A DNA stretch of 64,000 nt from Dimorphilus gyrociliatus (GCA_904063045.1 CAJFCJ010000022.1:496001-560000); one strand, 5' to 3'. Counted from the first letter of the stretch, positions 1 to 57,760 are shown. A program made the numbers and translations. Notes: generated from the letters alone by a model not told the origin.

Positions 1-1685
1 CATCTTATGAGGCGGTACATGAAGTCCTTCTTGAAAAATCAACAGATTTTGCAGGAAGGTTAGAACCTTTTAGAATTGCCGTAAGCTGCACATTCAAACG
101 GTTTCCTTATTAATTAAACAATCCATTTATTTCGTTTCAAAGCTTTCATACGATCTTCCGAATGATTTAATATTTACAAGTTTCTCACCCGAATGGAACG
201 CAAGGAAGAAGTTGGCTATGAAATCAATGAAGGTTCCTTATTCAATTCACTTTGAATACTCTAATTCACTCGCTAAAATATTCGTATTCTTGTTTAGATG
301 TATGGAGAAGGCTTGGAAGATCTCGAAAGGGTAACTGATCAAGTACTCGATGACTTTTTCAAAAACATCGATGAAAAACAAGGTCAACCTTGGGTGATTA
401 ACGAAGATATCATCAATTGTTTCGTCAACATCATCTTTACTTTGGTATATATTTTCTCTTCATATCACTTGTCTCTATAGTATTATCTTTCTATCCACTT
501 TTTTTATAATATAGGCTCTTGGAAAACGATTACCATGGAATGACCCAGCAATAGGTTTCTTGAAGAAAAATTTCGATGCTGCCACTCCATCTCAAATATC
601 ACCGGAAGGGATTATTTTGGACATATTCCCTTTCTTATGGAAGATGAATTTTCCAAGCAAAATATGCTCGGATTTACAAAAAGGTTTAGACGCCAACAAA
701 TGGTTTAAGAACGAAATTGACGAACAATTGGTAAACTAATAAATTCACTTTTAATCCACTTTAAACTTTCTATTATTATGTTGATTATAAACAGAAAACA
801 TTCGAAGCCAATAAGCCACGTGGCTACTTGGACCTATTCTATCAAGAATATCTAAATGAGCAGAAATTGGATTCAAAGACAAAGATATCTTATCCTCAAC
901 TTGTTATGATGACTATTCAAACTTTGGTTGCCGGTAATTTCTCTTCATTTTTCAATCAATGACATAATAGCAACTGTTTGAAATTTTTTATTTAACCCAA
1001 TTGCCACTAGGTTACGCTACTACTGCTACTGCCGTAACTTGTTTTATTCAATTAATGCTAAGATATCCAGAAATTCAAGAAAAGATTTATCAAGAAATCA
1101 TTGATAATGTAGGAAATGATAGACGTCCAAATATCAATGATAAAAATAATCATCATTATCTAATGGTATTGCGTTAAATTGAACAATTTGTAAACCGTTT
1201 CACAATTCGCTTTATCTCTTCCTTAGGCTTCAATATATGAGCTTTTACGATTCATCAGTCATGTTCCTATGGCAGGGCACAGGGCTATTAAAAATACTAC
1301 TTTGCTTGGATACAAAGTTCCAAAGGATCACAAAGTGTTCGTTTCTATGTGGGGTCTACACCACGATGAGAAAATCTTTCCAGAACCGTACAAGTTTAAG
1401 CCTGAAAGATATTTAGAAGAAAACGGGGAGTTTGTTGCACCGGGACATCCTTGCAGAAAAGCTCTATTTGCCTTTGGAGCCGGTAGACGTGTTTGTTTGG
1501 GAGAAACTTTGGCAAAGAATCGATTGTTTCTTGTGATAGGAGCATTGGTTCAGAACTATAAATTCCTTCCAGGAAATGGTAAGGACGTAGGAGAGGATGT
1601 AGATCCTAGAGACTATAAATTTGGAATCGTACTCAATCCAGGAGATCTAAATGTTCGAATGATAAGGAGAAACGGTAAAACTTAG
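1..1685 (+). CDS. Cytochrome P450, clan-2-like (CYP1/2/17/21-type); 5'-truncated, 7 exons in window
   Basis: Exons <1-80, 143-232, 298-444, 515-730, 795-933, 1011-1165, 1227-1685 join in frame through GT-AG introns of 61-77 nt (phases 0,0,0,0,1,0). Motifs: STDFAGR, C-helix WNARKK, I-helix AGYATT, K-helix ELLR, KPERY, heme-binding FGAGRRVCLG. Stop TAG ends at 1685. Confidence 0.97.
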
Positions 1686-3944: not shown

Positions 3945-5897
3945 CTAGAAATCCTTCTCTATTAAACGGGTTGTTAATTTTCTTAACCATAAAGCGGCAT
4001 CTGTACTTCTCGCTCGGCTTTCGCACACAACTACTAATATAAATGTTCTCGACTTTGAAACGATAAAGTATTTCGATCCGTTGAAGGCTATTAATTGGCG
4101 TTCGTCTCTTTCCCTAATAACGTAGGTAGTTCCATCTAGGGTAAGGCTATCTACTGGAAGATCTTGCAATCCTTTTTCGAAAGTTTTGCTTAGAATCTGT
4201 TAGAAAAAGCAAAAAATAAATGCTATTAGTTTAATTGAATAGACGAATAAATAATTGATTGATCGATTAATAGACAATTAAGCTCCAGGGTTGTATGTAT
4301 GTACATGTATATATATATATGTATACATTATTGGTATTATCCTATAGCGTATGGTCTACGTGCGTCAGTCGGATTTAATCTATAAACTTAAAAAAAAATT
4401 CATTGATAGATGGATGAATAGCTGAATGAAAAAATGATGCTTCACTTCTGCTGTTTCAGCCTAGCGATTTAGTAACAGAAGTTTTCCTAATGTCAATGTT
4501 TTGAAAGTAAATACTCGTGTTTTGTACTGACGTCAAAGATTTAGTTTTAAAGTCCATGTGTACATAAAAGTTTATATATATATTCTACTACAAATACTTT
4601 ATCCTTTTAGATAATTGTTGTTGGAATTATCTAGAAAATTATGGAGAAAACTGACAATTGCCAAATAGTTTAAGTATGATTGTCTAGACTTTAACAATAG
4701 TTTTAATACGAATTAGAGGCCTACATATACAATATAATATCAGACCATATTAAAATTAGAAATAAATGCAATAGATCTGAAATGAAAATTGTCTGGAGTT
4801 TTACAAAAAAAAAAAAACTATGAAATAGTTTTTCTACAATGTTTGACAAAGGAAACAGGTAAAAATGAATAAAACTCTGCCATCTATTCACAAGAATTTC
4901 ACATTTTTTCGTTCTCTAATAAAAGCCTTTATTATGCTAATCGTATTACAAAATATTCGCATTTATTCTAAATAGTGACTACGTCATGGAAATATCAGGA
5001 ATAAATCACGAGCATAGAATGTGAAACACTTAAAAACTAAAACATGAATATTAAGTGAAAAGAAGTACACATTATTTTATTTTAACTACCACTGATATCG
5101 TATGTTATTTATGTATTTAGGTCAAATTTGACAACAAAGCATCGCAGTATCCTGCAATTATTACAAGGTTAAGTAGAGGCAGGAATTTAATATTGTTTTA
5201 ATAACTTATCAAATGTTATTCTTTAACAAGTATTAAAAAAAATTAACTGATCATTAAAAAAAACAAGCAAAAGATTACGTAATTTTTTTGTTATTGGTAA
5301 ATCAAGAATAGAAGGAGGTAGTTGTAAGAGATTAACAAAACTATTCTAAATTTATCAAACAGATAAGGATAAAGGAAATTTACTTTTCTATTTCCTTTTG
5401 TTATTTATTTTCTTTATTTTGGTTTTTAACTAGTAAATAAGCTGTTTTAAAGTAATTATCTAGTGGTTTCTTTCTTCAACCTACTTTATCGATGACCTAA
5501 AGGATTATGAACAAATTAATATAAAAGGCCAAGTTCTAAAAAGGTGCTTTTTTTTAAGCTTTCACTTTATCTAATTTATAAAATTTTGATAAACAGCGTA
5601 CTTTTAATCGTTATCATATCTGACGCAAATCAATTTCGCGAGAAATTCGTATAGATTACTTCTTAATAATTATAAATTTTAAGAAAGACCATCAAAATAT
5701 TTTGTATGGAAATTATTTACCGTTATTTCTTTTTGTGGCATCGTAAAACCGGAAGTAGATGATACAACATTTCCGTTCAATTTAAATAAACCAGCTTTAG
5801 CCAGTTTAAAATTGTCTTTTTGTTTCATAATATGCTTTATCCAAACTTGCCATGTTTTTGACGGTTGATTTTTCATCAGACTATGGATTCCCAACAT
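3945..5897 (-). CDS. Divergent profilin-family protein (142 aa, 2 coding exons)
   Basis: Exons 5897-5721 (ACG|gtaaat) and 4196-3945 (ctaacag|ATT) join in phase 0. The product follows the profilin pattern: N-terminal W helix (TWQVWIKH), AGLFKLNG..STSGF, LTLDGTTYVIRERDER, FIVSKSRTFILV and a C-terminal helix. Confidence 0.88.
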
Positions 5898-5915: not shown

Positions 5916-6336
5916 CTGAATTGGTAATAAATAATAATATGAACAATGTGTTTATATACAAAAGAAAACTGTAGGCCTTATAAGATTCTTTAGCATTGCT
6001 ATCAAATAACCAGAAATGATTAGGCATTGTCTTAAAGAAGATATTTATTTTCCTAAATATAGAACTAAACGTTACGTTGTTCTCTCTCTCTCTCTCTCTC
6101 TCTCTTTAATGTAATTAAATAATTCTACCTTTAGAAAGTGAAAATGAATTTAAAATAAACTCTATATTGAATTATCTTGAATCTGAGGCTTTTGAACGGT
6201 TAGGTATTGTAGAAATATTGCCTATGATTTCCAATTATATAATCAACGACTCTAAATTGGGGCATGTTCGATATTCGTTCGGTGGAAATTTCCACTCGAA
6301 AGACACACATTTAGAATTAATTATTTATTAACTCAC
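5916..6336 (-). other. Probable 5'-UTR intron of the profilin-like gene
   Basis: Minus-strand acceptor ttcag| 18 nt before the ATG and a strong donor AAG|gtgagt at 6336. A CpG-rich patch with a CCAAT-like and a CRE-like motif at about 6740-6830 could be the promoter. Confidence 0.45.
6081..6104. repeat. (TC)12 microsatellite
   Basis: Direct reading. Confidence 0.95.
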
Positions 6337-9538: not shown

Positions 9539-10753
9539 TTAATAGTTCAAGTCCTTTGTCTCTTGTAGTTGATAGGATGTTGATATTGTTTGTCGACTAA
9601 AGGATATGAGCGACATTCGTTTTTTGACTCCTCTAAACATTGTTTGTAATTCCTTACGAAATGCCCTTTCCGCTAGGCAATAGAGAATAAAATTAAAGCT
9701 AAAGTTAATTGATTGTAACAAATTCGCTATCTCAAGGAGTTTTTGAGGAAGTTGTAAATTTGTTACAATAATTTCGCCATTATAAGAATTCTCCTTTTGA
9801 GATTCGTAGTTTCGCCATATCATCTTCTCAATTGCTTCAAATTTGATCAATTCGCTTGGAAATACAAAGAAAAATTGCATAATTATTAAAATCACTAATA
9901 TTCTAGCGATCTTAACGCCATCTTTTGTCACTGAATTTTGGAGGTAAGTACTCCTTTTGTTATGCGCTCTCCACAGGCAAATCATCAGGTTAATATTACA
10001 GAATATTAACAATAAGTAAGGTGTAAAGATAACTAGTAAGGGCCACACCCACTGATGATAGATTTCGAACGCCCTAAAAAAGCTGGAGCCAATGAAACGC
10101 TGTCTCGGCTGATAGAGAGTTTTTGATCCGAATTTGCACGGAACAGTTTGAACCCTTAAGAATTCGGGTATCGTGACCAAAATACAAACAAGAAGTAATA
10201 TGACAAATACAATAAGCGACTTCTTTATGGTTAGATATCTTTTGAAGTGAAGAGGCCATATGATCATTAGATTCCTTTCAACCGCCATCTTAACCGTTAG
10301 CCAAGTGCTTAGAACAAGGAAAAAGTTTAAGCTCGTTACCCCGTATACTCGAAATTCCGATGACATTTTAAAATAATCTGTTGATGCGTTAGTATTTCGC
10401 CAGTAGAGAATTGAAAATGGAACGTTTAATAAGTTATAACATAGATCGGCAAAAGCTAAAAATAGAAATCCCAAACAAGCACATAATCTTAGTTCACCAA
10501 TTTTACTATTGTGTATACGTCGGCCAAAGATTATTAAATTTAAGATATTTCCAAAAATACCAAATATGGCTAATCCCAGCTGAACGTAAACCGGCCAAAA
10601 GAAGCCGTCATTCTTCAATATATTACATTTTTCACTACTCTTCATATTTCTTCTAGTTTCTTCAATAACTTCTTTATAGGTTCTATTAAAGTGTTTCCTA
10701 AGTATTCTCTTAACAAGTTCGATATCGAATGTTTGATTGTACGTAGACGCCAT
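9539..10753 (-). CDS. Class A GPCR, FMRFamide/sex-peptide-receptor-like orphan peptide receptor (404 aa, single coding exon)
   Basis: Seven hydrophobic segments with TM1 GNILN, TM2 LAFADL, TM3 AVERN, TM5 P, TM6 FFFVFP, TM7 NFSFNFILYC and helix 8 FRKEL. The track ORF starts at a TTG (10831); the first ATG is at 10753 (MASTYNQTF, N-glycosylation sequons), downstream of a splice acceptor at 10800. Confidence 0.95.
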   Translation of the reverse strand: MASTYNQTFDIELVKRILRKHFNRTYKEVIEETRRNMKSSEKCNILKNDGFFWPVYVQLGLAIFGIFGNILNLIIFGRRIHNSKIGELRLCACLGFLFLAFADLCYNLLNVPFSILYWRNTNASTDYFKMSSEFRVYGVTSLNFFLVLSTWLTVKMAVERNLMIIWPLHFKRYLTIKKSLIVFVILLLVCILVTIPEFLRVQTVPCKFGSKTLYQPRQRFIGSSFFRAFEIYHQWVWPLLVIFTPYLLLIFCNINLMICLWRAHNKRSTYLQNSVTKDGVKIARILVILIIMQFFFVFPSELIKFEAIEKMIWRNYESQKENSYNGEIIVTNLQLPQKLLEIANLLQSINFSFNFILYCLAERAFRKELQTMFRGVKKRMSLISFSRQTISTSYQLQETKDLNY

Positions 10754-12182
10754 TATCCCAGTAACGCTTTCCCCTTCGCCTTTTCGATTCCTTCTGTTGC
10801 TGTCTGGGCAAAGAAACGATAATGTATTCAAATGGTACGCTTTCTTTATATTTCATATTTAATTATCTCTCTTTTTGTCTCTCATTCATTCATTCAATCA
10901 ATCGTATATTCATTTAGATAAACAGTTCCCTCTCTCTATCCATGTATCTAAATCACTATCTATCAGACAACTTCCGACTAATTCCACCTACGTATAGCTA
11001 TTACACGGATTATCTACATATTATACAAAGAATAATTTACACCAATACACTAACCAATAATAAAGCAGTGTATTTCGAACATTTGCAAATGACTACTCGA
11101 TTAATTTTCCTAGGCTGAAATTGTTTCTTTTTTTAAACTTTTTTTCGCGTTAAAAGATGAAAGAATAATAGTTTTTAAATAGAGAACGTCTAGTATTACA
11201 TTCAGATTTGGTCTTTCTTTAAAAAGCTAAAGAAGATAGAAGATAAAAGGGAAGAAGAAAAATCCTAGAAGAAATAAAAGAAAGTTACAAAAACTATTAA
11301 ACGTTGGCAACTATACTCGGAAAAGTTAATTTCGTTATCATTCATTTTAGTAACGACCTTGGCATTTTTTACTGCAAATAGCATAGATTTAAAAATAAAC
11401 ATATTCTATTTCCTGCTTTAACCTAACTCTTTCTCCTCTCTACTACGTACACCTATTTCATGGAATTTTTTCTTTTTTTCCCCTCTCTTCTCTGATCAAT
11501 CAATCGTTATTTTCCACCTCCAACTCCATCATCTAACTACCCAATGATCCACCCACAAAAATTTACGCCTTTCAGTCACAATATTTATATTTAAGTGAAA
11601 AGAATGGAAAGGGCAAATGGACAAAAAAAGGAAGAGACGTGGGAGGAAAAGTGGCATTTTTTTTATGTGGAAAATTTAAATACTTTTCTTTTTTAGGTTT
11701 TTTTCATTTGATCAAATAAACTAGAAAAAATTGGAAAAGAAATCAACATTTTCGTATAACTACGACAAGGCCAATTAATTATGAAAAGGCCTGTAATTAT
11801 TCTTTTACTTCCGTACATGTTGAATCATTATCATATTTATAAGTGTTTGTGACAGATGTAGATCATATATATATATATATGTACATATGCTGTATATACG
11901 CATTTTGATAACAAAGTGTAACCTTCTCTTTTGACACTTGTTGACAAATAAGCCCTAAAACGGAGAAATCTCTTAAAATAAACAAAAAGGAAAGAGAAGA
12001 GTCAACTCTTTATCAGCAGAAAAAATAATAAACAATTATAATAAACAAATTTTGACAAGAGAGCAGTAGAGATAAAGAAGGGAGACAGAACGACAGCTAG
12101 AAAAGAAGAAAGAAAAGAAGAAGAGGAAGAAGAAGAAGAAGAGATAAAAATATATGAACAAATAAGTTAAAATAAATAAAGG

Positions 12183-18488: not shown

Positions 18489-21400
18489 TCAAGGACCCAT
18501 AGCTTTGACAATATCAGCTTCATCCAAAATCTCTTGGGCAGTGTAACGATTTAGTTCGTCGTAGTTTGGGTCGAGTGTAAACCACATAGCAACGGCACAC
18601 CGACGTCCTTTCGTTACAGGTAAGACGCCGTGATAATGACCAGCATTAAAGCCGACAAGTCTTCCACACTGCGGTTCAAGTAAGGCTTGCGTGGTAAAAT
18701 TTTGATTAGCGAACAAAAATTTGCCTCCTTCGAAATCGCCATTGAGATACAAGATGGCGCTGTATGAAAAAAAATATACATTTTAGAAACAATGAGACAA
18801 CTGTTTACAATAAAGAGGTGTGTAGACTAGAGAATTTGTATCATGTACAGTATATACAGTATATATATATACTAATATAATATATATATATCTATATCTA
18901 TATATAGTACACAACATACTCTTATATAGTATAATTGTATAAAATTAGTAAATGGTAAAATTCGTTTTATAAAGGATGCCAAGTAGGAAATGTGCTGACC
19001 AATCAACCGATAAATATATCCTTTATTAACTTATAACGCCGAGTATTATTTAGTTAGAGTTTTCAAGCACAGGAGGAATTATTTGCAAAAATCACGCATG
19101 CGTATTCAAAAGAAGCTGATCCGTCAACTGATCAAAGAAATTTGAGCGGTAGCTTTTATGAACTGTTCACGCTTCTACATTGAGAACTCTATCGCTTCCG
19201 AAAACCACTTCGCGCAATAATCAGATTACACTCAAGACGGAAAAACCCTACCTATAATCCCTTTGAACGTAAGCCGGCCTTGTTCTAATACAAGTCTTAT
19301 CTTTCTGCATAACGCAATTATCGGCGTGTATAGGGTGACTTAAATCTTGGCGGTTATTTTGTGCACCTGGATAGTATTAGATAATAATCATTTTCATTCA
19401 AAAGAAAAAGATGTTATGTCTAAACAATTCCAACCTTCAATAGCCTCTCTACAAACCAAATGCGTATAATCAAAATAAATTTGTTTCTTTCCGTTTGTAA
19501 AGTAACTTTCAGCTATTTGTCGGCTTCTTTCACTCTTTCGAAGGTAAGTTGTAACCGCCTCCTTCAACGCCTTTTTCTCTTTCACCAACTGTTTAAGTAA
19601 AACAAAAAAAAAAAATACTTGTATATATCAATGAAATTATTATAACTCAAATAAATGACATTTCAAGAGCAGATAGACAATTTTTCAAATGCAATTAATT
19701 TGCCTCGCGGGAGCATCAACTCCAGTATAAAACCATAAAAACAAGAAAACTAATCTCATCCCATATTCTTGTTGCTAAGCAACAAATGTTTTTGTAACTA
19801 GAAACAAAAACAGATTAGCCAAAGAGGAAGAAGAATTTTACAGATAAAATATGATTAAGAGAGGAAAATATTCTAAAATTTTTACATTATTACTATTTGT
19901 TATTATTGTTATTGCCATAGTTTAATTTTACTTTCTTTCCCTTTCCCTCTCTATCTGTCTGTCTGTCTCTCTCTCTCTCTCTCGCTCTCTCCCTCCCTCC
20001 CTCCCTTTTTCCTTTCACCTTCCCAAATCTATTAGTAAAGTAAACATTTTAGAGACATTGTACAATTGGGGGTTTATCCCGCTATTATTAATTGTTTTGG
20101 GCCCAGAAATCCGATATGGGAAGAAGGGATAAGGGAAAAAAAGGGGTCATAATTAAAAAAAAAATACATTAAGCTTATAGTAATCTTGACGTTGATCATA
20201 CTTACGCAATTAAGGTTGCTATTTTGTTTATATCTTTTTTTTGGCCTCTTTTTTATGTTTTTTATTGTCAACAGTTTGGGCGAAGATTAAAGATCTATTC
20301 TATTGAAGGTTGTAATGTTATATTAGTAGAGGAATAGGAGGAGAAACGTTGAAATGTTGATAAATAGAAGACAGTTTGAAATTTCTCAACATAAAATGAA
20401 AATAAAATATTAAACAAGTTAGAATGTTAGTTTCTTTATAAAGAAAGTATAAACCAGTTCGTTAGATCAAAGTAGAAACATAATTAACTCACTTCCGCCG
20501 CCCTTTTAGGGGTCATTCCAGCGAAAAATTCACTATTTGTATGTGGAGATGTTCGCGACTCCATTCCTGGATAACCGTCACCAACGAGCGAGCCGGTCTA
20601 AAAGAAACGCCATACAATAAGGTCTATTGTTCAATTTGTATAAGAAATATACGAAAAATCTTACGTCTGCTAAATCAATTAAAAGTTTACAAGTATCTTC
20701 ATCTAGCACATTATCAACAACGAATCTATCGGTTCCGTTCAAGTCGTCTTCCCTCTTAAATACTTCCAAGTGGTCTTCTTGAACAATTTTCAAGAAATTT
20801 TCCTTCTCCTCCATATTCTCCATTTTCCGAACGGAATTAAATAGCGAAAGAGAGTTTTGAATTGTTTGATGTATTGAACGGCGATTGAAAGAAAATTCCA
20901 TTTTGATAAAGTACCTATTGCTATTTTGAATAGGGGATACTCTGTGACCTAATTTTTGAACTATCATTCGTCCGCAATTAGGCTTAACAAGACCTTCAAC
21001 TTCGCTTTCCGATTCGAGGAACAGTGAAGCTCTACAAAGTAAAAAATCAATCTAATCAATTCTTGTACTTATTCATTGAATTTCACTATATATAGATATA
21101 TTGGAAATTGATATTGGCTAATATCCACTACACGAATAAAAGAAAAGATAGAGGAAAGATTAGGGTTAAGAAGAAATAAAGAATGGTTCTGGTTAGGGTT
21201 GAAATGTTCAATTAGGTCAATTTAATTCAATAAAATTGGTCTTTTGGGTAAAATGGAATTGACTTTTAACCATAAAAAAAAAGGTTTAGGTCAGGAAAGG
21301 AAGTATCTTATTAAATGGAATAGACTAAAAGCTAAACGTACGTGATATCGGGAGAATCTGCACAACTGCTTTCAGGCGAATCGCAATATTCCAGATCTGG

Positions 21401-24400
21401 AAAGAGAAAATTACACATTTTCTTTTTTTGTTGCAGTTCAACCAAAAAAATTAATTAAATAGGAAAACGAATGATATAATAGAGGGGAAGACCTTTAGAA
21501 TTCTTCGTAGTTAATTCTATTAATGAATAATATATTTTCCCATCAAGATAAAAATATAAATCAGTAAACTTTCTAGCTTTTTCAACCACTTCCAAGTACT
21601 TTTCGACACGAAGAATGTCCAATTTTTTATCCCGAAGCGCCATCTGTCGTCAAAATTTCAAGTTATTTTTTTACGTATAATTACTATCATTATAACAGTT
21701 ACCTGCACAGCATCGCCCACGGTTAAAACTTCCTTCTTGTAATCTTTATGCTCGCTCTTTTCAGCTACACTGCTATACGCCTATAAATATACCCAGAGAA
21801 GATCGAAAAATCGTTAGGAAACAATAGAAAACTATATACTGTAGCAAGTTCCGTAAGTGCATTACACTCTTCTTCATTTAGAAGACCGTCTACTACAATA
21901 TGATTTTCGCCTTTAAGCTCGTTGCCATTGGCGTAAATCGAGAGTCCGTGCCGTTTATTAAATGATGAAACTATTTCTTCTTCGCTCCTTTTCTTAAGAG
22001 TCTAAAAGCAAAAAAGCATCCCTTTTATTAACAGCGTCAGCGAGGATCTATAGTATTGAAGTTAGATTTTCCTTTACCCTTTATTATTATTATTATTGTT
22101 ATTATTATATTTATTATTATATTTATATATCGTTTGCCTACTGTAGCTATAACCTTAATAGAAAATAAATTACCTGAGCTTCGATTTCTTTCAAGTGGAA
22201 AACTTGAGCTGCCTCTTCGTTGTCTCTTCTTGTCGTTTCGACATAGGCCTGCAAAGTAACAGTTTTTTTGCAATTTTTTTTTTGTTTTTTTGCTTTTTTT
22301 TACTTTGCACTCGACATGTAACAAAGCAAATAGAAACCGTTTAAGGAATTGGAAAAGAGAGGAACACTTTTAGCATTTCGATGCAACTTGTAAAAAAAAC
22401 GGGTAATTATCACTGGAAAAATTCAGACAAAAGCCTGACACGTGTCAATTAAACAAACTCGGTCACTCTCACCAAACAATTATCACTTAATCAGTAACAA
22501 TTATCGGCTTATGCCTGTAATCTTTCATCATTTGGGTACATTTTATTTTCTAAGGTAAGAGAATTCTGTGTACTATATTGGTTTGTCTCCCTCTGCCCCA
22601 CTCTCTCACTCTTATCTATGTTTTTTCCTTACGAAAACTGTTAATCTTCAATTAAGCATATACGCAAATAAATTTTAGTACCTTTCGAGGAGATAGATCT
22701 TCTTGACCTAGGATCTGAAGATAGTATTTCAAATTAGACTTCTGCCTCTTGTCATCAGCCGTAAAGAGGAGATAAGTCAAGCTACATTCCGCCGCTTCCT
22801 TTATCTTTTTGACTATAAAAAAAAGAAAAGAAAACGAAATAAAAGAAGAAATAAGAGAATAATAAGCAGGTTGAACTTCAAAAAGCGAAATCTAATTAGG
22901 ATAATGCCTTTTTCTTTCAGTCTCTCTTTGAAATTTTTACTAAGCCAGATGTAACGCTGCTTTAAAAAAACAATCTTTTTGAAAATTATGCCCGACAGGG
23001 CGTTGATATTTTTATCTGCTTATCGGAATGTGACTGACGATATGCCAAGGTAAAGGGGTTGAATTTTTTTTGTTATGTGCTACTTTCCCTCTTGCTTCTT
23101 TCTTGTCTGTAGACTCTTTCTTCAACTTCAAAAATGATAAGGTTGAGAAAACACTTTTTCGTTGAAGGAGAATGCTTTTGGGTGCAGGTTTCTTTGAGAT
23201 GAGAGAAAGAAATCACTCAGTAAGCCTCTCTTCTACCTCCTTTAGTTCCGTCCTTAGGAACGTATCACTATGGCTAATAATGAGCTTTAGACGAAAAGTA
23301 AAGTACTCTAGAGGGGCTTATTCGCCAATACTAGGAATACTAAAAATAAATATCGAATAACAAGACTCAAGGGAAGAGTATTTAAATTCCATCCAGCGGC
23401 GTGCGACAGAACAGCTGTATTTAAAAACAGCCTACACCTGGACCAATCGAGACAAGAAATTTATCAAATTTTCAACGTTATCGTGAAAATCCCACGAGTA
23501 AATGGGTCGCCGACCCGAAAATGTGCGAGTAAGCGTGCGGAATCCTTAAAGAATGCCTTAACTAGGAGGAAAACATCTGCGCCGATTATTATATAAATAC
23601 TAACCTTTATAATAAGCAAATTGTAAGTAATCGAATAAATCTCTGACGAAATTCTCTATAAAATATCCTTTGATTGTTTGTACTTTCCGTTTGCAATCGA
23701 CCTTACATTTGATATTCTCAATTAGGCCTCCTGAAGTAAAAAGAAATATACTAAGTAAGTAAGTAAGTTAGTCAGTCAGTCAATGAATAAGCAAATAATG
23801 ACTATGTGATAAACATAAAAGTTTCCCACTTTCCTCTTTTCTCCCTCATTATTTTCATACAAACTCCATAAAGATCAAATGAACGAAGAGAAAAGAATAA
23901 AGAGAAAGAAAACATACGAGCTTTAAAGACGATAAACATATGCTTTTATAAAATACAAACTTGTTATATTTGCTGAATTTTATCATTTACATAATTCTTG
24001 ATGATTATTAACAAAGAAAGTTTAAATAGCTTTCATTTGTCCGACACTTCAGCGTAAAAACTACATTAATCATAGGAAGATAGTACGTGACCAGCTCATA
24101 AACGCACTCTAGGCCTAAAAATGTTTCCAAAACGATCGCTTCTGAATGAATTAGATTGGGCGGGAAAAACGACTGTATTTAGTTGTGCCAGGGCAGAGAG
24201 ATTATAGATTCTATCGAATAAACTTTCTAATAATCTTATGCAATGAGTCTTAAAACTCGTAGGCCTGGAATTGGATCCTAAAGGCAAACAAATAATCAGC
24301 ATCCTTCCTGGCTTTTAAACGGAACAGCATATCTCCCATTGCTTTTATATTTCTAATGTGTAAAGTCAACCTGAGTCGATTCTACAGGCATATTTCTCTT

Positions 24401-25947
24401 TTGATGTTTATTTTTTACAAGAGGTCGGAAGAGAAGGGAAAAAACCTTAAAGAGGAAAACCTATTTACTTGATAGAACATTATGGAGTGCTGTATCATTT
24501 TCAGCAAAGTTCAAGAGATCATAGTCGCAGAGAGATCTACACTTTTCAGTTTCCTCTTCTACTTCAGATAACGTTTCCTCGATCACATTAATAAGCTTCT
24601 TAAATTCCTCTTTTTGATATAAATCCAATATTTTATCCCACGACACCTGCAGCAGAAAAAAAATACAGCAAAATCAATCTTACAACTCTAATAATAAAGT
24701 CTAGGTAAACATTATGCTGGTTTACGCAACCTTATTCGATTATGGTTGGAATATCTTAAGGAAACGTAAAAATTCTTGCTAATTCTATTATAAAACGGTT
24801 CTTTCCCCTTCCATCATGGAAGAATGGTAAGAAGGAAAAGAAGAAATATAAGGCAGCATATAGAAACATATACATTAAAAATAAATCTTTACCTCCCTCC
24901 CTCCATCCGCCTTTTTCTACTTAAATCGCGTATGGAAAGATGAAATATAGGCCAAAACAATAAAGAGAAAAATATAATAGGAACGTGTAAATACAAAAAT
25001 AAGGGAAAATTTGAACATGTCACGTTTATTATCTGATTATTTTGGATGAGAAAATACTCTCTATTGGGTTATATATCTTCGGCGTCATACGATAAAAAGT
25101 ATACCAATAAATAAATAAATAACCGCAATATTTATCTCAAAAACATCAATCGCATCAATGTTGATTACACTAGGCCTATTTATATACAATAGACAAAATA
25201 TGCAATGTCTACTAGTCGTTACTAAGTTTAACAGTTATCTATTAAAGAGTGTAGGGCGTAAAGTTTAAATTTAATTAATTATTAATCGATTTGCAGTTGA
25301 TACACTCACCTCGTACGACTTTTCCAAATAATTAACAAACAAACTTTCGTCAAAGCCTTCTAAATCGCCAAATCGTTTAAGTTTATCGTTATTTAATTCT
25401 GGATTGCTTATATACAATGTATAAGCAGCATTTGCGGCAGCTTTTAAGTTACCGATCTAAAAAAAAACAGTCATTAAAGAACAATTTTACGCAATTATAT
25501 CACCTCAAAAGCAGCAGCTAGTAAGTATTCATACGGTTCGAGTAACTTGAAAGCTTTGTCTACTTCATAATTACTGGGCGTCTGTTTTAGACGCTTAGAT
25601 AAACAGCTTCTAATACAATGAGAATTTTCTATTAAATTCAAAATCAATTTGGATTCTTCAGTAGTTATATCTTGGTATGTTCCTCCTTTCTTACATAATT
25701 GAGAACAAGATACTTTAACCCTTCGAACGCTTTCGTATTCGTGTATTGAAGTTGACACGTAGTCGAATAAAGCCGGCCAATCTTTCTCTTCAAAAGCTAC
25801 TTTCGCTTTTAAATAATAATCAATGTAATTCTTATCACTATCTCGAAGCTCGGCTTCCTGTTGATCCCCTCCACAAGCATTAATTAAGCAAACTATAATA
25901 CTTATTATTGTAAATAGTTTAAAAGTTACGCATTGTGCAGCCGCCAT
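18489..25947 (-). CDS. P3H: Prolyl 3-hydroxylase (leprecan family), 852 aa, 15 exons, with a tandemly duplicated dioxygenase module
   Basis: Exons (minus) 25947-25504, 25456-25310, 24646-24469, 23730-23605, 22812-22682, 22248-22174, 22001-21840, 21780-21703, 21643-21493, 21396-21342, 21031-20665, 20597-20493, 19588-19435, 19366-19252, 18759-18489 total 2559 nt, all GT-AG and in frame. It has a signal peptide, four CxxxC motifs (CSQLC, CIRSC, CRSLC, CKVDC), YLQFAYYK, GDGY..TSPHT, YFDYTHLVCR, HPIHADNC, RDYSAILYLNGDFEGG, PQCGRLVGF and HGVLPVTKGRRCAVAMWFT. Confidence 0.97.
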
Positions 25948-49958: not shown

Positions 49959-52900
49959 ATGGGACATCTAATATCTTCTATTCTTTATATTTTACTCTAT
50001 TCATCAAGCGTTCGATCTTTTGGGCCTGGAAATAATTTTCCATCGGGTAATGGAAATGGCGGAAACAACTGGGGTAATGGAAATGGACACAGTGATGGAA
50101 GCGAAGGAACTGGAGGAACAGGAGGAACTGGAGGATATGGAGCAACTGGAGCAAGTTCAGGTACTTCGGGGACTGTAGGATCTGGAGTTTATTTTCCAAC
50201 AAACACATGGAAGAAGCTATATTATCACCAATTGCCTCAGTTTCTAGACTGTGAGCTAATCGTCAAACATGTTGACGTTGACAAATGGAAAAGTGTATTA
50301 ATATAAGCGAATTAACTTTATTCCTCTTTTTTAATTCCTTTTCTTTTCATTTTTTCTATAGATTCATATAAACTCTAGGCAAGTTTTTAATCAACCCTCA
50401 TCCACTTGTATTCCTTTTAGCTTCGGAAATGTTTCGGGTAAATTGGTTACTCTTTTCATCCATTATGAATCTATGTACTGGGATAATAATTGTAAGAATT
50501 TACCAACTTCTATGGCTGAATTGAATGCTACAGGAGTTGTATTCCAAGCATTGGAAAGCCATAGTAAGTACATTTCAGTAATTTTTCTTTTTAGATTCTT
50601 ATATCGCGTGATAATGAATAAAAATTACATACATAACAGAAAGGCATATCGAAGACCTATTACTTTCAAAGAATTTTCAGATTCCAGTTGGCTACACCGT
50701 TAGTCAAGTAGAGCCTTTCTTCCATAGCGATAGTCATTCGGTTATTGTTACGGAAAATTCTGAATTGCCGTTCTTATACTCAGAAAGAAACTTACTTATG
50801 GATTATGGCAATCAAAAGTTGGTATTTATTTAAAGTAGGATTGTAGAGTCAAAAAATATCAATATAAAAATATAGCAGTAGATTCTATCGTTCATTTCTT
50901 TTACAGTTTTGTGGCATCCGCCGTACTCGATAGGAACCAAGCGACTTGTGTTCAATCCTATCCGTACAATGTCTTTAATCTGCCGAAAAGGGCTTGGATA
51001 CATACTGTTAAAATATGCCTACAGGCAACTGGTATATAAGAATAATTAACATTGTAGTTAGCACGCTCTTGATTCAATTTAACAAATACTCTTTACCTTT
51101 CCAGGAGGCTCTGCTAAAGTAGGAACAAACTCTTTCGCCACCATGTGTACAGAAGCGCCATCTGTATTGCCGTGTTTATATTTCAATTGTCAGAAACTAA
51201 AGAGAGGAAGCTACATACAAGCTTCGTTTAGTATCGGAGTGAAAATATGCGAAATAGAAATATTTTCTTATAATTTGGCTTACGGTTCAAAAATAATACT
51301 ATCAGATGATACAATGCTCAATATGATACATTCAAAATCGTTAATAGCTGACTTAAATACAGAAGATGAAGTAAGCTCGGCCTTAAAACTGAAATCATGC
51401 CATAAAGTAGAAATAGTATTCAATAGAAGAGTTTCAATACAATCTTTCGCCGCTAGAATTTCTTGTAAATATACTTTATTCATATATTTATTCCTTTATT
51501 GTTTCTTATACTTTACTTAGGTAAAAGTCAGGAATGCGAGAAAATTATTCAAATCAAGCCTACTATTGAAAATGATGAAAACAACTTTTGTGAAGAGTTT
51601 AGAATGGAAAAGATGTCAATGAATAATTTTTTTTGGGCTAGATTCCATTGTGGAGGGCAATCGAATTTCGTTAGAATAAAGAATATAATAGGACTAATTC
51701 ATATTGATGAAGTTGAAGTGTTTGGTGTAGACGGTAACGAGACAATTAATAACTGTAATCAGTCCAGTAGCTTGAATGGCAGAATGAATTGTAAACAATT
51801 CGCCCTTTGGAAAGTGGCAAATAATAGCAAAGTTTCACTTAATCAAACGTACAATCCATTCTCGTTGATAGACGATCGTTTTAATACATGCGTTCCGTTT
51901 AAGTTCCTGTATTATTACGAATGGAAAAGTGAATTCTATTCAAAACCATTCACAATCACCTTTACGAAAATCGTTTTCGAGTTGGTTGAATTAAAAAGGG
52001 ATCCCATACTTGTTGTGATCTATAAGAATAAAGATAAAACCTTTAGTCAGACAATACCCATAAAGGCAACTGGAATTGATATAACCTCGGGAAAGAGTGT
52101 TTTATATTGGACAACTTCACTCTCTTTTCCCCCGTTAGAGGTGTATCTTAGAGCGACAAGAATCGACTACGGTTCGTTATGCGAAATTATACTTGAAGGA
52201 GAAGGGCATCAACCATCTTTAAAACAGTTAAATTGGAAAGAAAAGGTTGAATTTAAAAATCGAATAACTTGCGAGGATTCCGATGTTCTAAACGATTCAA
52301 ACTGGAACCCTCAATTTTCTAATTGTATGAGTTTTCAATATGCAAATCAAGAGTATCCTTGGATAATTTTTGATCTTGAAAGTCCGTATGTAGTTAAGAA
52401 ATTACTGATTTCTTATTTGAAAGCAATCTCATCAATTGACATTTCGCTTCTTAACACATCGAGAGGAGTTGAATACTTGGATAAGAGGAAATTTCCCTAC
52501 AATTCTCAAAGAATTATTTGCGTAACGAAACTTTCCTTAAAACATTTTAGTGATGAAATATTTTGCAGAGAAAATGCAGTTGGATCTTTATTGACTATAT
52601 CAACTTTTAATCGTTTAGATTCTTTACAGATTTGCGAAGTAAAAATATTTGGTGAAGAAACCACTTTTATAGAGCACGAAGTCCTTTTGAGGACAAATGG
52701 AACAATTAGAAATGGAGATCGTATAGCCTTGGATACATTTTCAAATATAACAGCAATTTCAATTAGACCTAATAGGAATATCTCGGAAAAGCTAATAATA
52801 CACCTATCGAATAATCAAATAATTGATAAAGACCAATTGCATTTAAGTGATGGATCGTTAACTATCGATTTTAAGGAGTTAGAAATAGGAGATGAAAATA

Positions 52901-53408
52901 ATAATGTCTTATTACCAATATCTCCTATGAATCATGTGAGATATCTACACATTTTTGGTAACTTTACCGAAACTATACTACTAAGAATATTCGGATTATT
53001 CGAAAGAGGAAGTAATAAAATCTATATACCATTGCAAATATTCTTAATTAAGTTAAAATTAGACATACATACATACAAACAGACGAATAAATTCTCTTTT
53101 TCCCTTTTTATTCAGACCTGTTTCGTCGAATAGCAATCAATTTACAACTAGCAAATGGCCAAGTTAAAGATGAACACGATACTTTTCAAGAATGCGTTAA
53201 ATTCTGCCACGACAACAAAGATTGTTGGGCATTCTCTTGGAATAGACACGATAAATGCGTCTGCTCATTTAAACCGGAAACTGGGGGAACAGTGAGAGAT
53301 TTTTACCAGTATGATAATAGCAGCAGTTTGGAACTAATTAGACAAAATGGCTCGGAAATTTATTCTTTGTGCTTAACAAAGAAACAATTGAATATTATCC
53401 ATTGTTGA
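49959..53408 (+). CDS. Secreted multi-domain F5/8 type C / fucolectin-like protein with C-terminal PAN/apple-like domain (paralog 1, about 994 aa, 7 exons)
   Basis: Exons 49959-50294, 50362-50563, 50640-50817, 50907-51031, 51105-51464, 51521-53011, 53116-53408 (phases 0,1,2,1,1,1). Signal peptide, Gly-rich segment, repeated module motifs (LDRNQATC, IDDRFNTC, PWIIFDL, ICEIEIFS, IDEVEVFG, LCEIILEG, ICEVKIFG), then ECVKFCHDNKDCWAFSW..KC. Exon 2-3 boundaries are the least certain. Confidence 0.82.
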
Positions 53409-55901: not shown

Positions 55902-56963
55902 TTAAATTCCCCTTGAAGTTACTGTGCAGTTTTGTGTTTGGCCGTGTGAACCATTCGAAAATTTTCTTGTACTTTCAGGACTTAGGATTTTTATAAGAGC
56001 TAATCTAAATGCTTTACCAGAGGCACAATACAAGTAAAAGTTCAATATATAATTAGAATAGAATAGTATTTGAAAACTATTCCAAAGCAAACCAGTATTA
56101 TCTGGACCAATGCGGGCTTGAATGTTATTAAACTCTCTCGAGAAAACGAGCAATGGAGCAGTCGTTACGAGAAATGCAAAGCTGACTGTTAGAAGCATGA
56201 TGGTTGTTGACTTGATCTTATTCTGATCTTTATTTATAGAACCTTGCGTTAGATTCTGTTGAGTTCTCCTCGATCTTAACATTAAGGAAAGGATGATCAA
56301 GTTTCCCGTCAGGATAAAGGCAAAAGGGATAAAACTGCCGAATATTTGATCGAAAAGTTCTCTAGCTTCACTCAATCCTTTATTCCAGCCGTCGTGGCAC
56401 ACTCTTATTGTTTTAGTCTTACTTTCCAGTTTCATACCGAATAAAACATATGAATTAGAAGCGAATGTAACCAAAAGAACAATTATTATAGAAATCCACT
56501 CGACCCGATGCGTAATCCAAGCTTTAACCTTTAGTGGAGATATTAAACTCAATGCTCTCATACCCGTAACGAGAACTAGGAGCCATGCTGATGAGTGAGT
56601 CATCCAAAATTCTAGAAATGGTTGCAATTTGCAAAGACCGGTATTTACATTTCTTATTTCTTTTTCGCTTACAGATGTAGTGAAAACTCTTAGAACGCCA
56701 ACCAACAATACAAGTGAATCAACAATCGCTAAAGCTACTAAAACTCTGGATGATGGCACCTTTCGAAAAGACTTTGATCTAAGAACAATAGTAGCCAAAA
56801 GATTTCCACCAATACCAATTAGAAACACAATTGGGCACAATATAAGATACATAGCCTGAATTTTCCATGCTGTTGATTGATAGTTGATTTGAACAGGCGG
56901 GGTTCCGTAAAAATTATTTTTCGAGTTATCAACCAAACTTGAGTTGTTTCCAGACAGAGGCAT
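55902..56963 (-). CDS. Class A GPCR, FMRFamide/TRH-receptor-like orphan peptide receptor (353 aa, single coding exon)
   Basis: TM1 GIGGNLL, TM2 LAIVD, TM3 CKL..SAWLLVLVTGMRA..PL, ECL2 Cys, TM5 FIPF..N, TM6 FAFLVTTAP, TM7 SNYILNFYLYC, helix 8 GKAFR. The track ORF's first 48 aa are intronic (polypyrimidine tract and acceptor at 56980); the likely start is MPLSGNNSS at 56963. Confidence 0.95.
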   Translation of the reverse strand: MPLSGNNSSLVDNSKNNFYGTPPVQINYQSTAWKIQAMYLILCPIVFLIGIGGNLLATIVLRSKSFRKVPSSRVLVALAIVDSLVLLVGVLRVFTTSVSEKEIRNVNTGLCKLQPFLEFWMTHSSAWLLVLVTGMRALSLISPLKVKAWITHRVEWISIIIVLLVTFASNSYVLFGMKLESKTKTIRVCHDGWNKGLSEARELFDQIFGSFIPFAFILTGNLIILSLMLRSRRTQQNLTQGSINKDQNKIKSTTIMLLTVSFAFLVTTAPLLVFSREFNNIQARIGPDNTGLLWNSFQILFYSNYILNFYLYCASGKAFRLALIKILSPESTRKFSNGSHGQTQNCTVTSRGI

Positions 56964-57760
56964 TTTACGTGAATGACCGCTGTTTGAGGACAATATAATA
57001 AAGATAATAATAAAAAAAAAAAGAAAAAAAAAGCGGTTATGGCGTCTGTAAGTGATTGGCAAAACGACCCATTTAGTACATACATATTGTATGTTTGTTT
57101 GGATCATTAACGTAGTGTTTTTATTGGTTTCTGAAAGCTCACGACTGATTGAAAATGAATGATTGTACTGTGCGAATATTTATTATTGATTAAAAAATGC
57201 ATTCATAATTGATTTTTGCACTCGGGTATGGCCATTAAGATAACTGATATCTTATTGACGGCGCAATTTGACCTAATATCCCTTTGTAAGAGAAAAGAGT
57301 AAGAGGGAGAGAGAGAGAGAGAGAGAAGTAGCCTGAAATAGTTGATAATGAGCAAAGGGAAAAGATGGGGAAAGAAAGCGAGAAAAAATACGAAATTGAT
57401 TTAGGAGCTTATGTACTCACATTTTCTCTCCTTTCTCTTTTCCTTCCTTCCTTTCCTCCTTGATTTTAAGGTTTATTGGATAAATAAAACGACCAAACTA
57501 TATCGCTTTTTCTTTATCAAATCCAAAGTTTTGTCATTCTCATCCTATTAGAAGCTTTCAATAATTCCCTATAAAACCATACTCTTTCTTTATAAGAGAG
57601 ATGCAAATATATTAGTTAAGGTACCCCCACTTAAACTTTTGAATTATAACGCTTTAAACATTTTCTTTTTCATTATTTATAGAAGATAATTACATTTTCA
57701 CAAAACATTCTCTCTCGTAGGATACTCCCACTCATCCACTCTCCAGCTTTGTTTCTTCCA

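What the first reader, a model, noticed from the sequence alone, without database searches (positions are those of the whole stretch)
18489..22001. Prolyl 3-hydroxylase with a tandemly duplicated dioxygenase module: pseudo-enzyme copy plus intact copy
Seen: the catalytic module occurs twice. Copy 1 (exons 7-11): ELKGENHIVVDGLLNEEEC..LAT|..LTVGDAVQ|..ARKFTDLYF..IYYS..K|DLEYC..C..DIT|ASLFL..VKPNCGRMI..GHRVSP..NRYFIKMEF. Copy 2 (exons 11-15): DLNGTDRFVVDNVLDEDTC..LAD|..MTPKRAAE|..SRQIAESYF..IYFDYTHLVC..|..HADNC..C..RDYS|AILYL..LEPQCGRLV..YHGVLP..RRCAVAMWF. The four introns in each copy fall at equivalent positions with the same phases (0,0,1,2), pointing to a genomic internal duplication. Copy 1 aligns DLE where copy 2 has the HAD iron ligands (19328-19320) and lacks the NGDFEGG strand, but keeps the distal His and the 2OG-binding Arg. 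Established: vertebrate P3Hs have one such domain, need HxD..H for Fe(II), and hydroxylate Xaa-position Pro of collagen. Inference: copy 1 is a catalytically dead or repurposed collagen-binding or dimer-mimicking module. If the host is an annelid, it could relate to the unusual Xaa-position hydroxylation known from annelid cuticle collagens (speculative). I cannot confirm that this architecture is undescribed.
Basis: partly seen in the sequence, partly recalled or inferred. Interest (0 to 1): 0.88.

Follow-up and report, generated by a model that had tools for sequence, protein, structure and literature searches.

The report
Prolyl 3-hydroxylase with dead duplicate domain
This collagen prolyl 3-hydroxylase gene does carry a second, iron-site-less copy of its catalytic domain, but the two-domain layout is old and shared by molluscs, ribbon worms, a leech and a lamp shell, and this worm's copy is the most eroded of those compared.

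Summary
A 15-exon, all GT-AG, 852-aa gene lies on the minus strand at 25947-18489. It encodes a leprecan-type TPR domain, then a degenerate dioxygenase module (aa 385-568), then an intact one (aa 602-829; H738, D740, H806, R816). The four introns inside each module sit at equivalent places with phases 0,0,1,2.

The layout is not special to this genome. About 50 database proteins of 850-1000 aa have it: bivalves, gastropods, cephalopods, two nemerteans, Lingula and Helobdella. Most are named "prolyl 3-hydroxylase 1-like", and Pfam sees only one oxygenase domain in them. Vertebrate, echinoderm, hemichordate, arthropod and one bryozoan protein have a single module.

The upstream module lacks the HxD iron ligands in 53 of 54 proteins; only Lingula keeps them. 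It evolves about as fast as the TPR domain and is predicted to fold like the human P3H1 catalytic domain.

The window's copy is more eroded: about 45 residues shorter and missing both invariant cysteines.

The closest known analogue is OGFOD1/Tpa1. I found no paper describing this layout in P3Hs. This scan has not, as far as I saw, reported it elsewhere.

The parts
18489..25947 (-). Whole coding region of the prolyl 3-hydroxylase (leprecan-family) gene. It has 15 exons: 25947-25504, 25456-25310, 24646-24469, 23730-23605, 22812-22682, 22248-22174, 22001-21840, 21780-21703, 21643-21493, 21396-21342, 21031-20665, 20597-20493, 19588-19435, 19366-19252, 18759-18489. The product is 852 aa.
   Evidence: all introns are GT-AG and the frame is open; it aligns end to end (aa ~36-843) at 28-31% identity with two-module P3H-like proteins.
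22174..25947 (-). Exons 1-6: hydrophobic N-terminus (probable signal peptide), the leprecan TPR-like domain and the start of the linker (aa 1-367).
   Evidence: Pfam PF23557 TPR_leprecan, E = 3.9e-8 on exon 1 and 0.0025 on exon 3; tblastn of homologues places exons 1-5.
20875..21950 (-). Module 1 (aa 385-568; exons 7-10 and the first part of exon 11): a degenerate copy of the dioxygenase domain without an iron site. DLE (21493-21389, across an intron) replaces HxD. H545 lies within 20949-20932 and R555 within 20919-20893.
   Evidence: It keeps 17 of the 39 positions that are at least 70% conserved among 51 other module 1 sequences. Both invariant Cys are lost. It is about 45 residues shorter than module 2.
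20776..20874 (-). Linker between the modules (aa 569-601), inside exon 11.
   Evidence: It is 80% identical to the relative L001. The leech and the clam have an intron here.
18561..20775 (-). Module 2 (aa 602-829; end of exon 11 to exon 15): the intact 2OG/Fe(II) dioxygenase domain. H738 and D740 lie in HADNC at 19328-19314, H806 in 18635-18618 and R816 in 18605-18579.
   Evidence: PF13640, E = 2.9e-9 on the last exon; profile E = 8e-98; the four key residues H, D, H, R are present, as in 121 of 123 catalytic modules; dN/dS is 0.10 against the relative.
18489..18560 (-). C-terminal tail (aa 830-852) and stop codon. The protein ends ...KAMGP with no KDEL-type signal.
   Evidence: no downstream exon with a KDEL-like end within 3 kb; the relative L001 ends the same way.

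Best explanation
This is the ortholog, in a fast-evolving lophotrochozoan (an annelid according to earlier scan notes), of a two-module collagen prolyl 3-hydroxylase shared by molluscs, nemerteans, a leech and a brachiopod. An ancestral P3H gene duplicated the six-exon block that encodes its dioxygenase domain in tandem. That gave the order TPR domain, module 1, linker, module 2. Module 2 kept the Fe(II) ligands (His, Asp, His) and the 2OG-binding Arg, and is the working hydroxylase (inferred from sequence). Module 1 lost the HxD ligands in every lineage sampled except Lingula, so it cannot hold the catalytic iron. It was nevertheless kept as a folded jelly-roll domain under about the same constraint as the TPR domain. 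Most likely it is a non-catalytic binding or scaffolding domain for the collagen chain or a partner protein, in the way the dead second domain of OGFOD1/Tpa1 is thought to work (inference, untested). In the window's lineage module 1 has shrunk further. It lost the strand pair around NGDFEGG, the loop that carries HxD and a conserved cysteine pair. Part of it (aa 498-543) is still under purifying selection, and the strands with the old distal His and Arg now drift. The gene also lost three introns, one of them at the duplication junction, which is why exon 11 spans both modules.
For: Gene model and intron phases. Pfam TPR_leprecan and 2OG-FeII_Oxy_3. Exon 11 used alone as a query finds the middle of 846-916-aa proteins of Solemya, Ruditapes and Helobdella. 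About 50 two-module proteins from bivalves, gastropods, cephalopods, nemerteans and Lingula cover 98-100% of the query, while proteins of other phyla are shorter and match only the C-terminal quarter. Two modules are detected per protein in 54 proteins and one module in 70. Key residues: module 2 and single modules carry H, D, H, R in 121 of 123; module 1 does so only in Lingula. Human P3H1 H587A, D589A, H659A and R669A mutants lose activity: PMC11381544. Module 1 identity between species tracks that of the TPR domain (for example Octopus/Argonauta 73.5 against 73.2%, Haliotis/Mizuhopecten 40.4 against 40.1%). The AF2 model of an isolated module 1 (P0058) has pLDDT 84.6 and pTM 0.85, and its best PDB matches are human P3H1 chains (E about 2e-15, TM 0.72). 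In the ML tree the module 1 sequences of Lingula, the leech-type proteins, nemerteans and molluscs group together and mirror the species groups. Holding all 18 together, the window's included, is not rejected (p-AU 0.24). Six-exon blocks with matching introns occur in both modules of Solemya, and the leech and the clam have a junction intron. Against the relative, dN/dS is 0.10 for module 2, 0.11 for module 1 aa 498-543 and about 2.3 for aa 544-566. Contigs of about 3 kb that encode 814-1015-aa two-module ORFs in relatives are best read as transcripts. An RNA-seq run holds 0.43 of the sampled words of exons 7-10 plus their introns, where about 0.52 is expected for exons alone.
Against: The tree cannot exclude separate duplications: Lingula module 1 with module 2 gives p-AU 0.105, and mollusc module 1 with module 2 gives p-AU 0.43. 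The window's module 1 sits on a branch of length 3.1 and is not placed with confidence. It keeps only 17 of 39 conserved module 1 positions, so it may no longer share whatever function module 1 has elsewhere. The window's own module 1 could not be folded, because the tools take no spliced sequence. The inter-domain arrangement in the full-length model is uncertain (pTM 0.51). No experiment bears on binding or scaffolding.
Confidence: 0.8

Rival explanations
1. In this lineage module 1 is only a decaying vestige that serves as a spacer between the TPR domain and the catalytic domain. It has no binding or structural role of its own.
For: It lacks 22 of 39 conserved module 1 positions, including both invariant cysteines. 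It is about 45 residues shorter, and profile positions ~119-172 are missing. The stretch aa 544-566 is 26% identical to the nearest relative, with dN/dS about 2.3. Its branch length in the tree is 3.1.
Against: Five exons keep their frame and their splice sites. For aa 498-543, dN/dS is 0.11, the same as the catalytic module. The relative keeps the same short form. Words of exons 7-10 are present in an RNA run. The dN/dS estimates rest on 23 and 45 codons and on only the last third of the module.
Confidence: 0.3
2. The two-module layout arose more than once: separately in brachiopods, and perhaps separately in molluscs, annelids and nemerteans. Loss of the HxD ligands would then have happened in parallel.
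For: AU tests do not reject Lingula module 1 with module 2 as a clade (p = 0.105), nor mollusc module 1 with module 2 (p = 0.43). Lingula module 1 is as well conserved as a catalytic module (profile E = 1e-100).
Against: The ML tree puts all module 1 sequences except the window's long branch on one side (supports 72/84 and 74/63). The domain order is the same everywhere, with the dead copy upstream. Module 1 sequences share a consensus of their own. One gain is more parsimonious than three or four identical ones.
Confidence: 0.2
3. The two-module reading is a gene-model artefact. Exons 7-10 would be skipped or belong to a separate or dead gene, and the real product would be a normal single-domain P3H.
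For: The window's own full-length protein did not turn up in the protein library.
Against: Exon 11 is one open exon that carries the end of module 1, the linker and the start of module 2. Splicing exon 6 straight to exon 11 would break the frame, because exon 6 ends in phase 0 and exon 11 begins with the last base of a split codon. The protein is collinear with about 50 two-module proteins, several on transcript-sized contigs. An RNA run holds the words of exons 7-10.
Confidence: 0.05
4. Module 1 is still an enzyme or a 2OG sensor that uses other ligands, for example D498 and E500 with H545.
For: Most module 1 sequences keep the distal His (about 80%) and the Arg (94%). D and E at the HxD place are shared with the relative.
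Against: The first His of the triad is absent in 53 of 54 module 1 sequences. In human P3H1 single changes of H587 or D589 cut activity strongly (PMC11381544). The window's relative has lost H545 and R555. The strands around the site are deleted here.
Confidence: 0.03

Closest known systems
Human prolyl 3-hydroxylase 1 (P3H1/leprecan; PDB 8k0e, 8k0f, 8k0m; PMC11381544)
   Same: Both have an N-terminal leprecan TPR domain and a C-terminal 2OG/Fe(II) jelly-roll domain with His-x-Asp...His and an Arg for 2OG. Module 2 aligns with it over its whole length. An AF2 model of a module 1 also matches its catalytic domain best.
   Different: P3H1 has one dioxygenase domain, joined to the TPR domain by a linker helix. 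Here a second domain of about 185-225 residues without an iron site sits between them. The window's protein also lacks a KDEL-type end.
OGFOD1 / Tpa1p / Ofd1, the ribosomal uS12 prolyl 3-hydroxylases (PDB 4nhx, 3kt4; PMC4396695)
   Same: One chain carries two jelly-roll domains, one catalytic and one without a metal site. The pair is thought to come from a duplication, and the dead domain is proposed to bind substrate or partners. Foldseek matches the full-length two-module model to Tpa1 and OGFOD1 over about 600 columns.
   Different: There is no sequence kinship beyond the superfamily (one search finds only P3H1 and CRTAP). The order is reversed: there the dead domain is C-terminal, here it is upstream of the active one. 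Those enzymes have no TPR domain, act on a different substrate and work in the cytosol or nucleus. The low TM score (0.15-0.24) shows no similar domain packing.
Unstudied database proteins named 'prolyl 3-hydroxylase 1-like / 2-like' of molluscs, nemerteans and Lingula, and Helobdella HELRODRAFT_181486
   Same: They have the same TPR, module 1, linker, module 2 order and align end to end with the window's protein at 28-31% identity. Module 1 lacks HxD in all but Lingula.
   Different: Their module 1 spans the whole domain profile and keeps the invariant cysteines and the NGDFEGG-type strand. They end in KDEL-like signals. The leech and the clam have three introns that the window has lost.

Membership tests
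Leprecan / collagen prolyl 3-hydroxylase family | N-terminal leprecan-type TPR domain | tested here: met
   PF23557, E = 3.9e-8 (exon 1) and 0.0025 (exon 3). The N-terminal part is collinear with P3H-like proteins.
Leprecan / collagen prolyl 3-hydroxylase family | C-terminal 2OG/Fe(II) dioxygenase domain with the His-x-Asp...His triad and the 2OG-binding Arg | tested here: met
   PF13640, E = 2.9e-9. P3H catalytic-domain profile, E = 8e-98. H738, D740, H806 and R816 are present.
Leprecan / collagen prolyl 3-hydroxylase family | ER residence: signal peptide and a KDEL-type C-terminal retrieval signal | tested here: not met
   The N-terminus is hydrophobic, but the protein ends ...KAMGP and no KDEL-like exon lies within 3 kb downstream. 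The relative L001 ends alike. Homologues end in KDEL, RDEL, HDEL or HVEL. This is typical of the family rather than strictly defining.
Leprecan / collagen prolyl 3-hydroxylase family | 3-hydroxylation of Xaa-position proline in Gly-Pro-4Hyp of collagen | not testable with these tools
   This needs an enzyme assay or Hyp mapping by mass spectrometry.
Lophotrochozoan two-module P3H (unnamed group defined here) | A second dioxygenase-like module between the TPR domain and the catalytic module | tested here: met
   The profile hits aa 385-508 (3e-14) and aa 516-568 (3e-3) upstream of the full hit at aa 602-829. Exon 11 matches the middle of the Solemya, Ruditapes and Helobdella proteins.
Lophotrochozoan two-module P3H (unnamed group defined here) | Module 1 without the HxD ligands but with the group's conserved core (two invariant Cys, the Cys loop, CGR, distal His, Arg) | tested here: inconclusive
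   HxD is absent, and the Cys loop, CGR, His and Arg are present. But both invariant Cys are lost and only 17 of 39 conserved positions are kept. Placement in the tree is unsure, although a single module 1 clade is not rejected.
OGFOD1/Tpa1/Ofd1 tandem jelly-roll prolyl hydroxylases | Two jelly-roll domains in one chain, one lacking the metal site | tested here: met
   The description of OGFOD1 is taken from PMC4396695.
OGFOD1/Tpa1/Ofd1 tandem jelly-roll prolyl hydroxylases | Catalytic domain first and dead domain last, with sequence kinship to OGFOD1 | tested here: not met
   The order is reversed. A sequence search of the PDB with a two-module protein finds only P3H1 and CRTAP. So this gene works like that family in layout but is not a member.

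The most novel reading that the evidence does not exclude
Module 1 is a conserved non-catalytic partner of the active site. It would be a built-in collagen-chain or chaperone-binding domain that takes over part of the role played in vertebrates by separate subunits around P3H1 (CRTAP/PPIB). The lophotrochozoan enzyme would then be a self-contained collagen-processing machine. Lingula, with both iron sites intact, would have a true double-headed hydroxylase that shows the intermediate state.
Probability: 0.15. Interest if true: 0.65.

Novelty: new variant of a known kind. Interest (0 to 1): 0.42.

Why it matters
P3H enzymes are studied almost only in vertebrates, where faults cause brittle-bone disease and the enzyme works in a three-protein complex. 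This analysis shows that a large block of animal phyla uses a P3H with an extra dioxygenase-like domain that cannot bind iron. Standard domain annotation (Pfam) does not see that domain. One lineage, Lingula, keeps both copies with catalytic residues, so the series shows how an enzyme domain turns into a pseudo-enzyme domain. It gives a direct handle for asking what a dead jelly-roll domain contributes to collagen processing. It also flags that the labels 'P3H1-like' and 'P3H2-like' on these proteins hide a different architecture. For this window alone the value is that of a sound annotation and an example of further erosion in a compact genome.

Tried and rejected
(1) I first counted a candidate extra exon at 24277-24104. 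I dropped it because homologues align straight from exon 3 to the exon at 23730, and those two exons join in phase without it.

(3) Two further homologous-protein searches were meant to list more annelids and other phyla. One used the module 1 region of P0058 and the other an alignment of ten two-module proteins. Each returned only the query, which is a limit of the word index and not evidence of absence.

(4) The look-up of encoding contigs had no record for the Lingula, Tubulanus and Patella proteins. Gene structures could therefore be compared only for Helobdella and Solemya.

(5) I looked for a downstream exon with a KDEL-type end and found none.

(6) Broad multi-term literature searches were swamped by unrelated papers. 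The narrow ones found nothing on the architecture: 'prolyl 3-hydroxylase' with 'protostome' gave 0 papers and with 'mollus*' gave 2 irrelevant papers.

(7) AU tests did not separate a single duplication from several duplications.

An annelid-type module 1 (P0058) and a full-length nemertean protein (P0044) were folded instead.


Full report
**What is in the window.**
I placed the splice sites by eye and with tblastn of homologues. The result is a 15-exon model in which every intron is GT-AG and the frame stays open for 852 codons. A sixteenth candidate exon (24277-24104) was dropped because homologues align straight across it.

Pfam finds the leprecan TPR domain in exon 1 (E = 3.9e-8) and 2OG-FeII_Oxy_3 in the last exon (E = 2.9e-9). 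Intron phases after exons 7-10 and after exons 11-14 are 0,0,1,2 in both sets. In an alignment of the two modules, the introns fall in the same columns, the third within one residue of a gap edge.

**The two modules.**
I built a profile from 109 P3H catalytic domains. It hits aa 602-829 at E = 8e-98. It also hits aa 385-508 (3e-14) and aa 516-568 (3e-3), with profile positions ~119-172 missing between the last two.
- Module 2 has H738, D740, H806 and R816. These correspond to the human P3H1 residues H587, D589, H659 and R669, whose mutation cuts activity (PMC11381544).
- Module 1 has D-L-E at the HxD place. It lacks the NGDFEGG strand and is about 45 residues shorter, but it keeps H545 and R555.

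**The layout is widespread.**
Exon 11 encodes the end of module 1, the linker and the start of module 2. Searched alone against 1.8 billion representative proteins, it found four hits:
- a 158-aa fragment, 71% identical, from a close relative;
- the middle of an 846-aa protein of the clam Solemya;
- the middle of an 887-aa protein of the clam Ruditapes;
- the middle of a 916-aa protein of the leech Helobdella (identified).

A search with the Solemya protein then listed about 50 proteins of 850-1200 aa that cover 98-100% of it. They come from bivalves, gastropods, cephalopods, the nemerteans Tubulanus and Lineus, and the brachiopod Lingula. Vertebrate, echinoderm, hemichordate, arthropod and bryozoan proteins are mostly 620-750 aa and match only the C-terminal quarter.

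Domain counting with phmmer and the profile gives two modules in 54 proteins and one in 70. Pfam itself reports only one oxygenase domain in these proteins, which probably explains why the layout goes unremarked. The window's protein aligns end to end with them at 28-31% identity.

Several two-module proteins sit on contigs of about 3 kb that are almost filled by the reading frame. I read these as assembled transcripts, which would mean the two modules are made as one message in those species.

**State of the iron site.**
Across the alignment, catalytic and single modules carry H, D, H, R in 121 of 123 cases. Module 1 carries them only in Lingula. Everywhere else the first His is gone and the Asp usually is too, while the distal His (about 80%) and the Arg (94%) are mostly kept.

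Module 1 is not decaying in general. Between species pairs its identity tracks that of the TPR domain, for example 73.5 against 73.2% for Octopus/Argonauta and 40.4 against 40.1% for Haliotis/Mizuhopecten. Module 2 is more conserved.

An AlphaFold2 model of the module 1 of P0058 (an unnamed protein that groups with the leech's), built with 51 module 1 sequences, has pLDDT 84.6 and pTM 0.85. Its best PDB matches are human P3H1 chains (E about 2e-15, TM 0.72, 27% identity), followed by PHD2 and other 2OG oxygenases.

In a full-length model of the Tubulanus protein (pLDDT 83.8), both modules are confidently folded. The arrangement between domains is uncertain (pTM 0.51). Its PDB matches are P3H1, CRTAP and then Tpa1 and OGFOD1.

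**Origin.**
In Solemya each module is encoded by six exons with matching boundaries. Solemya and Helobdella both have an intron in the linker between the modules. Helobdella module 1 and both Solemya modules also have an extra intron inside what is the last exon of the unit in the window.

This is the footprint of a tandem duplication of an exon block. It also shows that the window has lost three introns, so the junction inside exon 11 is secondary.

In the careful ML tree, the module 1 sequences of Lingula, the leech-type proteins, nemerteans and molluscs group together and repeat the species groups seen for module 2. The supports are moderate (72/84 and 74/63). The window's module 1 has a branch of 3.1 and floats. 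Holding all 18 module 1 sequences together costs 0.77 log-likelihood units (p-AU 0.24).

The data also fail to reject Lingula module 1 with module 2 (p = 0.105) or all mollusc modules together (p = 0.43). One old duplication is therefore the most economical reading, but it is not proven.

**This lineage.**
A 4.8-kb genomic contig of a close relative (L001, Logan SRR23372229) covers exons 10-15 with the same exon layout. Nei-Gojobori estimates against it:

| Region | dN/dS | Codons |
|---|---|---|
| Module 2 | 0.10 | 216 |
| Module 1, aa 498-543 | 0.11 | 45 |
| Module 1, aa 544-566 | about 2.3 | 23 |

The last stretch holds the old distal His and Arg. The relative has Arg in place of the His and Lys in place of the Arg.

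Against 51 other module 1 sequences, the window keeps 17 of 39 well-conserved positions and has lost both invariant cysteines. The window's module 1 is therefore a further-eroded form. Part of it is still constrained and part is drifting.

The protein, like its relative, ends without the KDEL-type signal that its homologues carry.

**Expression.**
Indirect evidence remains:
- An RNA-seq run (X1, labelled coral metagenome) holds 0.43 of the sampled words of 21342-22001, which is exons 7-10 with three short introns. I expect about 0.52 from exons alone and 1.0 from genomic DNA.
- The frame is kept through all five exons that carry module 1 (exons 7-11).
- Exon 11 physically joins the two modules.
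- Leaving out exons 7-10 would break the frame.

**Comparison with what is known.**
The gene meets the sequence criteria for the leprecan/P3H family. It differs from every studied member by the extra module.

The nearest known design is the OGFOD1/Tpa1/Ofd1 group of ribosomal prolyl 3-hydroxylases. They have an active jelly-roll domain followed by one without a metal site. That pair is thought to come from a duplication, and the dead domain is thought to serve in partner or substrate binding (PMC4396695). Here the order is reversed and there is no close sequence kinship. So this gene works like that group in layout but is not a member.

I found no paper on this architecture in P3Hs. 'Prolyl 3-hydroxylase' with 'protostome' gave no paper, and with 'mollus*' gave two irrelevant ones. 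The library lacks most subscription journals.

The layout is not annelid-specific and module 1 is dead in the annelid-type proteins. The unusual Xaa-position residue reported as abundant in earthworm collagen is 4Hyp, not 3Hyp (PMC8233474).

**Organism.**
Earlier notes of this scan call the genome that of the miniature annelid Dimorphilus gyrociliatus. I did not verify this. Short introns and low G+C are compatible with it. In my tree the window's module 2 is not placed firmly with the leech.

**Verdict.**
This is a real gene and a real internal duplication with a dead upstream copy. It is an old layout spanning several phyla, present in dozens of database entries but apparently undescribed. 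It is a new variant of a known kind and of moderate interest. This window holds its most degenerate example.

Noticed in passing
window 18489-18560 (-); L001:3257-3529: The protein ends ...KAMGP followed by a stop, with no KDEL-type ER retrieval signal and no such exon within 3 kb downstream. The close relative ends ...KAVGP. Homologues in other phyla end in KDEL, RDEL, HDEL, HVEL or NMDL. The enzyme may be held in the ER by a partner, or it may be secreted.
   Followed up: partly
P0045 (Lingula anatina isoform X3) aa 418-640 and 688-885: In Lingula the upstream module keeps the full His-x-Asp...His...Arg set and scores like a catalytic domain (profile E = 1e-100). The downstream module also has HxD but is cut short in this isoform by a different 3' end. 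This may be a P3H with two active sites.
   Followed up: partly
L003 (Helobdella robusta KB097642.1) nt 4947-5039 and 6031-6138: The leech gene model contains two consecutive copies of the second exon of module 2 (aa 728-758 and 759-794, both phase 0/0). It lacks the parts with the YFDYTHLVCR and YLNxDFEGG motifs. The two copies may be mutually exclusive alternative exons wrongly joined, in a model that is faulty elsewhere.
   Followed up: no
window exon 11 (21031-20665) and exon 15 (18759-18489), compared with L003 and L004: The window lacks three introns that the clam has: one inside the last exon unit of each module and one at the junction of the modules. The leech model shows the module 1 intron and the junction intron. 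This fits a compacted genome.
   Followed up: yes
window 9539-10831 (-) and 55902-57107 (-): Two long single-exon ORFs (430 and 401 aa) match rhodopsin-family 7TM receptors: PF00001 at E = 3e-11 and 5.8e-21, with weaker Srw chemoreceptor hits.
   Followed up: no
window 1269-1685 (+): This ORF matches the C-terminal part of cytochrome P450 (PF00067, E = 4.9e-31). It is probably the last exon of a P450 gene.
   Followed up: no
window 51499-53133 (+) and 62426-63856 (+): Two long ORFs (544 and 476 aa) have no Pfam match at E <= 0.001. They were not examined further.
   Followed up: no
   Followed up: no
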